Assembly (NCBI GenBank): GCA_965202585.1
Contig: CBDBBG010000262.1
Span: 1-64,000 of the forward strand
Source: Thalia democratica
Lineage: Eukaryota
Direction: 5' to 3'
DNA length: 64,000 nt
The notes beneath the pieces are model-generated. The model saw nothing but the letters and a program-made list of their open reading frames with translations, ran no database searches and was not told the DNA's origin. Position numbers and translations under genes: made by a program. Positions 47,481 through 49,160 of the stretch are shown one piece after another (positions within the stretch are counted from its first letter, which is position 1; every line of letters begins with the position of its first letter).

Positions 47481-49160
47481 ATGTCTTTCACTGAAAAAGA
47501 TCTGAATGAATTCTTAAAATCCAATACTCAACAAGACTATCTGCTTGACTTTTATAAGGAAGAACTTGAAAAGAAAAATAAGCAGATCCAAACAATTAAA
47601 GAAACGTTTAGTAAACATAAAAAATCTGCAGTAAATATAGTTGTAAAACTTGTGAAAAGCAACCATCTAAACTTATCTCGACCTAGTTACTCGCTGAGGA
47701 ATTTCAAGTTTAAAATTGAAGATTTAAACGAGAAAAATGCAGATTATAAACTATTGAGCAATGCACTAAAAGATGTAACAGGAAAAGTGAAAACGCTCGA
47801 TACTAAAGACACAAGCCAAAAAAAGATTGTAAGAATCGTGCCAGCAAAAAAGCAAAAAGTAGAAGATAATAAAGCCACAAATTTACTTTTACTTCACGGG
47901 ACTCCCGCAGCGAACGTTATGAGAATTTTAAAAGAAGATTTTATACCGTCCAAAATGGGCAAGCACGGCCCGGGAGTGTACCACACAAACAGTCAAAATC
48001 AAGCATCTCTGTACAGTGAAAATTACAAAATCGAAAACTCAACTCTTAAGAGAGTGAGCTACCTGTTTGTTAACAAGGTAAAACAAACCAAGGCGCCAAA
48101 AAAACCGAGGAAGTTTTTCGGTAAAAATATTTATGATGAGTATCTGAAACAAAAGCCTGTTTTGCAGACTTTTGATTACAAAACAGGCAACGTAGTAGCA
48201 ATTGATGAAAGTATGCAGTACAAAACTGATGAAGCAAAAAATAAGTTGATAGGAGGTACATTCAGTCATGCTATTAGTAAAACAAACATTTTTCTAGCTC
48301 ATCATGATCTGGTAGTCCCTGCTTATCTAATCGAAATTAAAAAAGAAGCAGACATTCAAAAATTTGTGTCTAACGCGCTTTACGATTGGTTAGAGATAAA
48401 AAAATTCAAAGATGTACAACCTGCCAACGGAGTCAAAAAACTAACCATAGAATATCTAAAAGAATACGTAGAAAACGAATTGAATGCAAACCACAATGAA
48501 GAGTTAAAGTTTACAGAGCTTAAGTTCAACTACAAATTGAGATCCACTCTGCAGCAAATAGCTTTCAAACTCACTGACATTACTGATATAAAAAAAGACA
48601 AAAGCAGCAAGTACTCAATCAAAGAACTTACTAAAAAGCACGAAGACTATCTGTTCGTGATGCGTTCGATTTCATGTGAAAGTGTTGGAATTATTCCTAA
48701 CGTTCTTCACATATACGCAATTGATTCCAAGGCAAAAAGCGAGGAAATAAAAGGCAGAAGGTTGTACGCCCACGGGGTAAAGTCGGACAAAATTCAAAAG
48801 ATTATAACATCCGGCTACGATTGCCAGTCGTGGAGTGCAATGTGTTTTGAGGAGTGCGTTGCCTGCAACGAAGCCCCCTGCGCCCGCTACTCGACCTCAT
48901 GCTACCTTTTAGAGAAGGAAAAAAGTAACAACAGGCGATTGAGTAAGAATTTCAACATGAAAATCCAAAAGCTTGTCAACAAAAACTTGGCTTATGTTTT
49001 TCTCGTTGCCAGAAACGAAAAGAGCATTGGCAAGAACGTTGATACTGACAGCAGAGGATGCTACATCAAGGATGGAACGCTGATGCCTGATTTTAAATCT
49101 GAAGTTGAACACACGCCTGTGGTTGAAACGATCCCGACCTACCTGCTCGTTGTGAAATAG
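47481..49160 (+). CDS. Intronless 559-aa protein with N-terminal coiled coil and two tandem PARP-like (ADP-ribosyltransferase) domains
   Basis: Domain 1: LLHGT...ILKEDF...GPGVYHTN...ASLYS...LVVPAYLIE. Domain 2: LYAHGV...IITSGY...ARYSTSCY...IPTYLLVVK. The ORF is uninterrupted. Confidence 0.8.
   Translation: MSFTEKDLNEFLKSNTQQDYLLDFYKEELEKKNKQIQTIKETFSKHKKSAVNIVVKLVKSNHLNLSRPSYSLRNFKFKIEDLNEKNADYKLLSNALKDVTGKVKTLDTKDTSQKKIVRIVPAKKQKVEDNKATNLLLLHGTPAANVMRILKEDFIPSKMGKHGPGVYHTNSQNQASLYSENYKIENSTLKRVSYLFVNKVKQTKAPKKPRKFFGKNIYDEYLKQKPVLQTFDYKTGNVVAIDESMQYKTDEAKNKLIGGTFSHAISKTNIFLAHHDLVVPAYLIEIKKEADIQKFVSNALYDWLEIKKFKDVQPANGVKKLTIEYLKEYVENELNANHNEELKFTELKFNYKLRSTLQQIAFKLTDITDIKKDKSSKYSIKELTKKHEDYLFVMRSISCESVGIIPNVLHIYAIDSKAKSEEIKGRRLYAHGVKSDKIQKIITSGYDCQSWSAMCFEECVACNEAPCARYSTSCYLLEKEKSNNRRLSKNFNMKIQKLVNKNLAYVFLVARNEKSIGKNVDTDSRGCYIKDGTLMPDFKSEVEHTPVVETIPTYLLVVK

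What the first reader, a model, noticed from the sequence alone, without database searches (positions are those of the whole stretch)
47481..49160. Intronless protein with two tandem, divergent PARP-like domains
Domain 1 keeps the NAD-binding His (HGT, 47895) and Tyr (GVY) but appears to lack the catalytic Glu before the P-x-Y-L-I strand (TNIFLAHHDLVVPAYLI), suggesting a mono-ADP-ribosyltransferase. Domain 2 keeps His (HGV, 48771) but has a Cys-rich segment where the GxY motif should be, suggesting a pseudo-enzyme or regulatory copy. No WWE, macro, ankyrin or zinc-finger domain is visible. It has no introns, whereas the neighbouring gene has 49 exons in this window, implying retroposition, mobile-element cargo or horizontal/viral origin. 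It is a candidate lineage-specific innate-immune or toxin-like effector.
Basis: partly seen in the sequence, partly recalled or inferred. Interest (0 to 1): 0.7.

Follow-up and report, generated by a model that had tools for sequence, protein, structure and literature searches.

The report
Two-unit PARP-like ADP-ribosyltransferase gene
This is an intact gene in an AT-rich marine animal genome for a protein with two copies of the PARP enzyme fold, the first apparently working and the second degenerate. It belongs to a large unnamed family whose nearest named relatives are the virus-induced Gig2 genes of fish.

Summary
Window 47481-49160 (+) is an intact 559-aa ORF, by far the longest in the window. 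It encodes two ADP-ribosyltransferase (ART) folds that arose by internal duplication (half against half: hhalign 99.4%, E 1.5e-21). Models of the whole protein and of unit 2 alone both hit PARP1/2/3 catalytic domains (Foldseek E ~1e-7).

Unit 1 keeps His139 and Tyr167, which are nearly invariant in the family. The third triad position is Ile270, as in mono-ADP-ribosylating PARPs. Unit 2 lacks the Gly-x-Gly-x-Tyr motif, and its His431 is kept in only 24 of 42 relatives, so it is probably a pseudo-enzyme domain.

The gene belongs to a large unnamed family of at least 42 two-unit and 40 single-unit cluster representatives. All come from marine metagenome contigs, and the four two-unit contigs with usable flanks share dispersed repeats with this window. 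The nearest named relatives are fish Gig2 proteins and PARP15/14.

The origin claims are not supported. I found no poly(A) tail, terminal repeats, viral neighbours or viral relatives. The upstream 200 bp is conserved, and dN/dS is 0.40. Flatfish Gig2 genes also carry their coding sequence in one exon. A toxin-like role is unlikely because there is no signal peptide. An immune role is plausible but untested.

The parts
47287..47480 (+). Conserved upstream region, either promoter/5' UTR or the end of a 5' UTR intron. It contains a polypyrimidine-AG acceptor-like motif (47428-47445) and a TATA-like CTATAAAAAT (47450-47459).
   Evidence: Aligns to the upstream of the related contig L001 at about 89% column identity, higher than the 82% over the coding region. 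Sequence read. Function is inferred, not shown.
47481..49160 (+). Complete coding sequence, 559 aa plus TAG stop. Predicted 64.5 kDa, pI 9.4, 14.7% Lys, with no signal peptide and no membrane segment.
   Evidence: Start and stop positions are shared with full-length relatives. dN/dS against L001 is 0.40 at dS 0.40.
47493..47657 (+). N-terminal helical segment (helices at residues 5-14 and 18-59) preceding ART unit 1.
   Evidence: AlphaFold2 model md7bd5409abd5: helices 5-14 and 18-59, with pLDDT up to 95.
47688..48365 (+). ART unit 1 (residues 70-295), the PARP-like catalytic domain predicted to be active. His139 is at 47895-47897, Gly-x-Gly-x-Tyr167 ends at 47979-47981, and the third triad position Ile270 is at 48288-48290. 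A long variable insert (about residues 202-268) sits between strands 4 and 5.
   Evidence: Pfam PF00644 at 28.1 bits. Family profile against PDB: PARP15 at E 1e-5 to 1e-11, then PARP3/2/1/14. Foldseek against PARP1/2/3 at E 1e-7. Column counts: H 39/42, Y 42/42, column 270 = I18 V9 T5 E5 L3 F2.
48447..48563 (+). Long helix (residues 323-361) preceding ART unit 2. It occupies the same position as the N-terminal helix.
   Evidence: It is included in the half-against-half alignment, but homology of the helices alone is not significant (E 0.039).
48573..49157 (+). ART unit 2 (residues 365-559), a degenerate duplicate. His431 is at 48771-48773. It has no GxGxY motif, and it keeps the DSRG and PxYL motifs.
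   Evidence: hhalign against unit 1: 98.8%, E 1e-16. Separate model mc96359b0ffea: pLDDT 80, pTM 0.82. Foldseek top hits are PARP1/PARP3 ART domains, E 1.3e-7, TM about 0.5. No Pfam hit. His kept in 24/42, Gly in 40/42.
48822..48902 (+). Cys-rich insert in unit 2 (residues 448-474), at the place where unit 1 has its Gly-x-Gly-x-Tyr strand.
   Evidence: The cysteines are only partly conserved (for example C455 in 21/42 and C467 in 18/42) and are absent in some members. Model confidence is low there (pLDDT below 50 at 460-465).

Best explanation
This is a resident, intact gene of an AT-rich marine animal, with its coding sequence in a single exon. It encodes a cytosolic, basic 64-kDa protein built from two repeats of 'long helix + PARP-type ART fold', produced by an ancient internal duplication.

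Unit 1 keeps the NAD+-binding His-Gly and Gly-x-Gly-x-Tyr elements. It has Ile where poly-ADP-ribose polymerases have the catalytic Glu. It is therefore predicted to transfer single ADP-ribose units from NAD+ onto a target, as the H-Y-I/L-type PARPs do. Unit 2 keeps the fold but has lost the NAD+-site motifs. It is predicted to be non-catalytic and to act as a structural, targeting or regulatory partner.

The gene is one member of a large, fast-diverging, unnamed family with single-unit and two-unit forms. All members in hand come from marine metagenome contigs, and the contigs examined share repeats with this window. By analogy with fish Gig2 and the antiviral mono-ART PARPs, the most likely role is in host-parasite conflict or innate immunity.

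Shown: the ORF, the duplication, both folds, the motif states, the family, and purifying selection. Inferred: the exact column of the third triad residue, enzymatic activity, the role of unit 2, and the immune function.
For: - ORF and start/stop.
- Duplication.
- Folds: models with pLDDT 80.9 and 80.0; Foldseek top hits are all PARP catalytic domains.
- Sequence: Pfam PARP; family profiles hit PARP15/3/2/1/14.
- Motif conservation: unit 1 H 39/42, Y 42/42, G163 and G165 42/42; third position I/V/L/F/T in 37/42 and E in 5/42. Unit 2 His 24/42, no GxGxY.
- Single-unit relatives have H and Y in 40/40 and Glu at the same column in 10/40. One of them (P0147) matches the Pfam PARP model end to end. 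This anchors the column.
- Family size: 103 representatives at E<=1e-30 and 302 at E<=1e-10.
- Same lineage: L002-L005, the two-unit contigs with usable flanks, share dispersed repeats with the window, and L001 is 82% identical including the upstream region.
- Selection: dN/dS 0.40 overall, 0.32 for unit 1, 0.52 for unit 2.
- Named relatives: Astyanax and Mustelus 'GCRV-induced gene 2' proteins at E 1e-32 and 2e-23, 28-41 bits per unit.
- Gig2 is virus/IFN-induced and antiviral on overexpression (PMC3617106; bioRxiv 10.1101/693333).
Against: - No activity, expression or target data exist.
- The third-triad column was assigned from alignment to single-unit relatives and from the model's strand order, not from a residue-level superposition. 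It could be off by one or two residues, and 11/42 members have Glu two positions earlier.
- The Pfam score is only just above threshold and covers the N-terminal half of unit 1 only.
- Similarity to fish Gig2 is confined to about 70-85 residues around the His and Tyr motifs; the C-terminal halves do not align. PARP15 scores as well against the single-unit profile (47 bits). The Gig2 link, and with it the immune analogy, is therefore weak.
- The source organism is unidentified.
Confidence: 0.6

Rival explanations
1. The whole protein is a pseudo-enzyme. Neither unit transfers ADP-ribose, and the protein acts only as a scaffold or as a binder of NAD+ or ADP-ribose.
For: There is no Glu at the third triad position. 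The Pfam score is marginal. Unit 2 is clearly degenerate. dN/dS of 0.40 is fairly relaxed.
Against: His139, Gly140, Gly163, Gly165 and Tyr167 of unit 1 are kept in 39-42 of 42 two-unit and 39-40 of 40 single-unit relatives. That is hard to explain without NAD+ binding. From established knowledge of the PARP family, H-Y-I/L/T/Y triads occur in active mono-ARTs.
Confidence: 0.2
2. Unit 1 is active but its target is nucleic acid rather than protein, for example RNA or DNA ends, as in Tpt1/KptA-like and some PARP-like enzymes.
For: The protein is basic and Lys-rich (pI 9.4, 14.7% Lys). The family profile gives weak hits to RNA 2'-phosphotransferase structures (E 0.05). Fish Gig2 units match the NCBIfam RNA 2'-phosphotransferase model (53 bits, below cut-off) and Pfam PTS_2-RNA weakly.
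Against: All these matches are below the curated thresholds and cover only the His/Gly region common to the whole H-Y clade. PARP matches are much stronger.
Confidence: 0.1
3. The gene is a recent arrival: a retrocopy, transposon cargo, or an integrated viral or horizontally transferred gene.
For: The coding sequence is uninterrupted next to a gene of about 50 exons. Codon GC3 is 0.40 against 0.59 for the neighbour's exons. PARP-like genes occur in giant viruses. Zhang et al. invoked horizontal transfer for Gig2-like sequences in algae and marine metagenomes.
Against: There is no poly(A), target-site duplication, LTR or TIR. No mobile-element or viral genes lie nearby, either here or on five related contigs, which are gene-poor and AT-rich like the window and in most cases share its dispersed repeats. 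No IMG/VR relative was found, and viral fold hits are no closer than human PARPs. The upstream region is conserved and the gene is under purifying selection. Other ORFs in the window have GC3 of 0.21-0.23, so composition is heterogeneous anyway. Flatfish Gig2 also has a single coding exon. An ancient transfer at the origin of the family is not excluded.
Confidence: 0.07
4. It is a secreted or injected toxin-like ADP-ribosyltransferase.
For: ART folds are common in toxins. A two-ART layout with one inactive copy recalls binary clostridial toxins (from general knowledge, not tested here).
Against: There is no signal peptide or hydrophobic segment: maximum Kyte-Doolittle 1.32 and a hydrophilic N-terminus. 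The motif type is H-Y, not R-S-E. The top 50 PDB fold hits listed for each model are PARPs, not toxins.
Confidence: 0.03

Closest known systems
[quoted passage not shown] 2013, PMC3617106)
   Same: These are the nearest named relatives in a search of 1.84 billion representatives: Astyanax P0105 at E 1e-32 and Mustelus P0138 at E 2e-23. They share the His-Gly ... Gly-x-Gly-x-Tyr ... Ala core without the 4-residue insertion seen in PARP15. They form multigene families with tandem units (2 or 4) in one polypeptide. The coding sequence lies in a single exon (PMC9122973). No accessory domains are present.
   Different: Only about 70-85 residues align. The Gig2-specific C-terminal part does not align with this family. 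Fish units are about 140-160 aa and are similar to each other. Here the units are about 200-230 aa and unequal, one intact and one degenerate, with a long helix before each. Gig2 was described as restricted to non-amniote vertebrates, whereas this window is an AT-rich (about 27% GC) genome that does not look vertebrate. Induction by virus is unknown here.
Mono-ADP-ribosylating PARPs with an H-Y-hydrophobic triad (PARP15, PARP14, PARP10; Pfam PF00644)
   Same: PARP15 is the best solved-structure sequence match (E 1e-5 with the two-unit profile, 1e-11 with the single-unit profile), followed by PARP3/2/1/14/10. The ART fold is the same. His and Tyr are kept, and the third position is hydrophobic.
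   Different: There are no macro, WWE, zinc-finger or other accessory domains. A long variable insert precedes strand 5. A second, degenerate ART unit and long helices are present. Sequence identity is only about 12-17% in structural alignments.
Giant-virus PARP-like proteins (for example Bodo saltans virus NAD+ ADP-ribosyltransferases in BFVD)
   Same: They share the ART fold (Foldseek E 4.8e-7).
   Different: They are no closer than human PARPs (E 1.1e-7). No sequence relative was found in IMG/VR. The genomic context here is a gene-poor host-type region, not a viral one.
Two-ART-domain binary toxins (VIP2, C2I, iota Ia), an architectural analogy from general knowledge only
   Same: One polypeptide holds two ART folds from a duplication, one active and one degenerate and reused as an adaptor.
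   Different: Those toxins belong to the R-S-E clade, are secreted, and have the inactive copy at the N-terminus. Here the motifs are H-Y type, there is no signal peptide, and the degenerate copy is C-terminal. No such toxin appeared among the top 50 hits listed in either PDB fold search.

Membership tests
PARP catalytic domain superfamily (Pfam PF00644; H-Y-E clade of ART folds) | Sequence match to the family model above its curated threshold | tested here: met
   Unit 1 scores 28.1 bits against a cut-off of 26.7, covering residues 88-204. Single-unit relatives score 54-66 bits, one of them end to end. Unit 2 has no Pfam match.
PARP catalytic domain superfamily (Pfam PF00644; H-Y-E clade of ART folds) | ART fold shown by structure comparison | tested here: met
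   Whole-protein model: 207 PDB hits at E<=1e-3, with the top 50 all PARP1/2/3. Unit-2-only model: 263 hits at E<=1e-3, top hits PARP1/3 ART, TM about 0.5.
PARP catalytic domain superfamily (Pfam PF00644; H-Y-E clade of ART folds) | NAD+-site His and Tyr | tested here: met
   Unit 1: His139 in 39/42 and Tyr167 in 42/42. Unit 2: His431 is present in this protein but in only 24/42 relatives, and the Tyr motif is absent. The feature is therefore met for unit 1 only.
PARP catalytic domain superfamily (Pfam PF00644; H-Y-E clade of ART folds) | Catalytic Glu at the start of strand 5, which is needed for poly-ADP-ribose chain elongation | tested here: not met
   Ile270 aligns with the Glu of single-unit relatives (xE[FY][VI]A). 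Family counts at this column are I18 V9 T5 E5 L3 F2. The column was assigned by alignment and by the model's strand order, not by superposition.
PARP catalytic domain superfamily (Pfam PF00644; H-Y-E clade of ART folds) | NAD+-dependent ADP-ribosyl transfer | not testable with these tools
   No biochemical data are available.
Gig2 family (Zhang et al. 2013) | N-terminal stretch weakly homologous to the PARP signature | tested here: met
   Fish Gig2 units match the unit-1 HMM at positions about 60-145 with 28-41 bits each. hhalign gives 97.3%, E 1.7e-11.
Gig2 family (Zhang et al. 2013) | Conserved Gig2-specific C-terminal part of each unit | tested here: not met
   No alignment was found beyond the N-terminal half, by either hmmsearch or hhalign.
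Gig2 family (Zhang et al. 2013) | Coding sequence in one exon preceded by a small non-coding exon (flatfish genes, PMC9122973) | tested here: inconclusive
   The single coding exon is met. A conserved polypyrimidine-AG lies 36 nt before the ATG and fits a 5' UTR intron, but no transcript data exist.
Gig2 family (Zhang et al. 2013) | Induction by virus or interferon | not testable with these tools
   No expression data are available.
Gig2 family (Zhang et al. 2013) | Restriction to non-amniote vertebrates | tested here: not met
   The window has about 27% GC with intergenic DNA at 21-24%, unlike vertebrate genomes (general knowledge). The relatives come from Tara Oceans and other marine metagenome contigs, and the two-unit contigs with usable flanks share the window's repeats. 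The species was not identified.
Processed retrocopy | Poly(A) tract and target-site duplications at the ends; an intron-bearing parent gene | tested here: not met
   There is no poly(A) run after the stop. No flanking direct repeats appear beyond chance AT-rich matches. No other copy is in the window. All 82 relatives are uninterrupted ORFs. An ancient event cannot be excluded.
Mobile-element or viral cargo gene | Terminal repeats, neighbouring transposase or viral genes, and relatives in viral genomes | tested here: not met
   Searches cover the window. Searches cover the related contigs, each holding an isolated ORF in non-coding AT-rich flanks. One search (IMG/VR) found none, and one search found only generic PARP folds.

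The most novel reading that the evidence does not exclude
This family could be the invertebrate counterpart of the vertebrate Gig2 antiviral ADP-ribosyltransferases. That would mean Gig2-type effectors predate vertebrates and the interferon system, and were independently expanded in a marine zooplankton lineage. The fixed pairing of one intact and one degenerate ART unit would then act as a self-contained effector-plus-adaptor (or decoy) module.
Probability: 0.25. Interest if true: 0.6.

Novelty: new variant of a known kind. Interest (0 to 1): 0.42.

Why it matters
ADP-ribosyltransferases of the PARP type are recurrent weapons in host-virus conflict. The fish Gig2 family has been described as confined to non-amniote vertebrates, with a few unexplained hits in algae and marine metagenomes. 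This window anchors a large, unannotated, Gig2/PARP-like family in an animal genome. The family has single-unit and two-unit forms and a variable third catalytic residue.

If the source species is identified and expression data are obtained, the family could show how mono-ART effectors diversify outside vertebrates. It would also give a natural case of an enzyme domain paired with its own degenerate duplicate. Otherwise it is a well-behaved but ordinary lineage-specific PARP-like gene.

Tried and rejected
- A single-sequence search of solved structures found nothing relevant. Only family profiles reach PARPs.
- HMMER alignments to PDB PARPs never extend to the strand that carries the catalytic Glu. 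The third triad column could therefore not be read from a solved structure.
- Rfam and tRNA scans of the window were empty and gave no clue to the organism. The window's own protein is not in the contig index.
- Cluster look-ups gave names for only two clusters out of 20, and those names were fish and shark Gig2.
- NCBIfam gave nothing for the window protein.
- The bacterial-type promoter/terminator scan is uninformative for a eukaryote.
- The IMG/VR scan with the single-unit alignment could not run because no stretch was conserved enough. The two-unit alignment found no viral relatives.
- The domain-2-only protein search found only three short family fragments.
- A broad literature search for Gig2 in invertebrates returned irrelevant papers. 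'Gig2-like' occurs only in fish papers.
- Homology of the two long helices taken alone is not significant.
- Composition (GC3) does not discriminate native from foreign, because genes in the window range from 0.21 to 0.59.

I considered and rejected: an exon of a larger PARP gene (start and stop are shared across relatives, and an in-frame stop lies 12 nt upstream); a pseudogene (intact ORF, dN/dS 0.40); and a ciliate-type genetic code artefact (the ORF is open in the standard code and the neighbours are metazoan-type genes).
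Full report
**1. What is there**

Window 47481-49160 (+) is an ATG-to-TAG open reading frame of 559 codons. An in-frame TAA lies 12 nt before the ATG. In a window of about 27% GC, where stop codons are frequent, the next-longest ORF is 312 aa and the rest are under 180 aa, so this ORF is not a chance product. The window contains no N.

**2. Two ART folds from one duplication**

Pfam recognises only the first half of unit 1 as a PARP catalytic domain, at 28.1 bits against a cut-off of 26.7. 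It finds no WWE, macro, ankyrin or zinc-finger domain.

A profile of unit 1 (residues 70-295) aligns to a profile of unit 2 (365-559) with hhalign probability 98.8% and E 1e-16. Half against half, using 42 family members, gives 99.4% and E 1.5e-21 over residues 4-287 against 302-559. The helices alone are not significantly similar.

AlphaFold2 with the family alignment gives a confident model: pLDDT 80.9, pTM 0.70. In it, each ART unit is preceded by a long helix (18-59 and 323-361). Foldseek against the PDB returns over 200 hits at E<=1e-3, and the top 50 are all PARP1/2/3 catalytic domains (E about 1e-7). A separate model of unit 2 alone (pLDDT 80.0, pTM 0.82) also hits PARP1 and PARP3 ART domains first (E 1.3e-7, TM about 0.5). 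Unit 2 is therefore a real ART fold even though no sequence model recognises it.

**3. State of the catalytic motifs**

I aligned 42 two-unit family members.

Unit 1:
- His139 is kept in 39 of 42.
- Gly140 is kept in 41 of 42.
- Gly163, Gly165 and Tyr167 are kept in 42 of 42.
- Ala175 is kept in 40 of 42.

The strand before the final PxYLIE strand starts at Asn269-Ile270 in the model. In single-unit relatives this strand reads xE[FY][VI]A in a quarter of cases (Glu in 10/40; alignment). One such protein, P0147, matches the Pfam PARP model over positions 1-198 of 199. Ile270 of the window protein sits in that Glu column. Across two-unit members the column is I18, V9, T5, E5, L3, F2.

The pattern H-Y-hydrophobic is that of mono-ADP-ribosylating PARPs (established knowledge of the PARP family). 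One caveat applies. The column rests on alignment and strand order, because no tool gave me a residue-level superposition, and 11 of 42 members have a Glu two residues earlier.

Other strongly kept positions of unknown role are His274 (41/42), Pro280, Leu283 and Glu285 (37/42).

Unit 2:
- The Gly after the His is nearly invariant (40/42), but His431 itself is kept in only 24/42.
- There is no Gly-x-Gly-x-Tyr motif.
- The Cys-rich stretch (residues 448-474) is variable, is absent in some members, and is modelled with low confidence.
- The DSRG and PxYL motifs are conserved.

Unit 2 thus looks like a structurally maintained but catalytically dead copy.

**4. The family and where it lives**

A word-indexed search found 16 relatives, all unnamed. 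The best is 73% identical.

An exhaustive HMM search of 1.84 billion cluster representatives found 795 hits at E<=1e-3, 302 at E<=1e-10 and 103 at E<=1e-30. From the sequences in hand I could classify 42 two-unit and 40 single-unit (195-315 aa) representatives. The single-unit proteins match the unit-1 model (90-107 bits) far better than the unit-2 model (16-54 bits). Unit 1 therefore keeps the ancestral state.

Searches with each domain alone found only family members and fragments (domain 1; domain 2).

Every contig examined came from Tara Oceans or other marine metagenome assemblies. Each carries the gene as an isolated ORF within 0.2-10 kb of non-coding DNA of 20-28% GC. Contigs L002-L005 share dispersed repeats with the window (window 42261-42381, 43724-43995, 60717-60835). 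L001 is 82% identical over the gene plus 194 bp upstream. These contigs, and probably the family, therefore belong to the window's organism or close relatives.

ORF fragments of the neighbouring minus-strand gene look like laminin-EGF, FN3 and LamG segments, in the manner of usherin. Only laminin-EGF was confirmed by Pfam. About 50 GC-rich exon islands lie in 1-36 kb. This marks the organism as an animal. I could not identify the species.

**5. Named relatives**

Only two clusters of the 20 looked up carry names. One is an Astyanax mexicanus protein annotated 'PARP catalytic domain-containing' / 'GCRV-induced gene 2e'. The other is a Mustelus asterias 'GCRV-induced gene 2o'.

These fish and shark proteins contain 2-4 short units. 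Each matches the unit-1 model over the His...Gly-x-Gly-x-Tyr...strand 3/4 region only, at 28-41 bits (hhalign 97.3%, E 1.7e-11). The rest of the unit does not align.

Gig2 was described as an interferon- and virus-induced family that protects fish cells when overexpressed. It has a 'basic unit' that can occur two or four times in tandem. [quoted passage not shown]

PARP15 is the best solved-structure match (27 bits with the two-unit profile, 47 bits with the single-unit profile). I therefore file the family as a PARP-like ART clade whose nearest named relatives are Gig2 and PARP15/14. I do not file it as a member of Gig2: one defining feature, the Gig2 C-terminal part, was tested and not found.

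**6. Origin claims**

I found the following.
- There is no poly(A) tract after the stop.
- There are no target-site duplications, LTRs or TIRs beyond short AT-rich chance matches.
- There is no second copy in the window.
- There are no transposase or viral ORFs nearby.
- There is no relative in IMG/VR.
- Viral structure hits (giant-virus PARPs, E 4.8e-7) are no closer than human PARPs.
- The 200 bp upstream of the ATG is more conserved against L001 (about 89%) than the coding region is (82%).
- dN/dS is 0.40 overall, 0.32 for unit 1 and 0.52 for unit 2, at dS 0.40. This is a functional gene under moderate constraint.
- GC3 (0.40) differs from the neighbour's exons (0.59). However, the Kelch-like and other ORFs in the window are at 0.21-0.23, so composition is not diagnostic.
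[quoted passage not shown] A single-exon coding sequence is thus normal for the nearest named relatives. A conserved polypyrimidine-AG 36 nt before the ATG (47428-47445) would fit the same layout or a trans-splice site, but this is untested.

A recent retrocopy, transposon or viral insertion is therefore unlikely. An ancient transfer at the root of the family cannot be excluded.

**7. Mechanism proposed**

Unit 1 is predicted to bind NAD+ through His139/Gly140 and Tyr167. Lacking the Glu, it would transfer single ADP-ribose units. Unit 2 would be a non-catalytic partner for targeting, regulation or oligomerisation, together with the long helices.

The protein is cytosolic and basic, with no signal peptide or membrane segment, pI 9.4 and 14.7% Lys. 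A nucleic-acid target is a minor alternative, supported only by weak sub-threshold similarities to RNA 2'-phosphotransferase.

An immune or conflict role is inferred from three things: the Gig2 and PARP analogy, the size and divergence of the family, and the variable third catalytic residue. It is not shown.

**8. Verdict**

The gene is a new variant of a known kind: a PARP/Gig2-like mono-ART family with a fixed pairing of an intact and a degenerate ART unit, unnamed in public annotation. Interest is moderate.

I entered none of them in any tool, note or script, and no conclusion here rests on them. The motif assignments rest. Consensus lines that appear were printed by the alignment programs themselves and were not used.

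Noticed in passing
window ~2500-34000, minus strand: A large multi-exon gene, usherin-like by eye. Its ORF pieces look like laminin-EGF, FN3 and LamG segments, but only laminin-EGF was confirmed by Pfam. There are about 50 GC-rich islands. The ten exon ORFs I measured have about 49% GC (GC3 0.59), in a window whose intergenic DNA is only 21-24% GC, an unusually sharp contrast.
   Followed up: partly
window 37895-38332 (+), 40729-41046, 52629-53168 (-): Kelch-repeat ORF fragments lie on both sides of the PARP-like gene. Window 52684-53000 is 75% identical in DNA to 40729-41046. GC3 is very low (0.21). They may be paralogous BTB-Kelch-type genes or pseudogenes.
   Followed up: partly
window 62488-63426 (+) and 55329-55733 (-): Two further uninterrupted ORFs (312 aa and 134 aa) have no Pfam match. 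The 312-aa ORF is Lys/Glu/Asn-rich and may be another single-exon gene.
   Followed up: partly
window 42261-42381; 43664-44002 and 44593-44946; 60717-60835; 42850-43242 vs 49773-50154: Dispersed and locally duplicated repeats. The first, the 43.7-44.9 kb pair and the 60.7 kb repeat also occur (70-85% identity) on metagenome contigs L002-L005 that carry family members. This ties those contigs to the same or a related genome.
   Followed up: partly
window 47428-47459: A polypyrimidine tract ending in AG (47428-47445), then CTATAAAAAT (47450-47459), lies just before the ATG. Both are conserved in L001. This could be a 5' UTR intron acceptor, a trans-splice site or a core promoter.
   Followed up: partly
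family alignment, residues 273-285 of the window protein (48297-48335): Ala273-His274-His275 and Glu285 flank the last two strands of unit 1. They are as conserved as the NAD+-site residues (36-41 of 42) but have no assigned role. Unit 2 lacks them.
   Followed up: no
P0105, P0173, P0138 (fish and shark Gig2 proteins fetched as relatives): Fish Gig2 units score 53 bits (below the cut-off) against the NCBIfam RNA 2'-phosphotransferase model. They also match Pfam ART-PolyVal and Exotoxin-A catalytic models above or near threshold. This suggests that Gig2 units are minimal H-Y-E ART domains.
   Followed up: no
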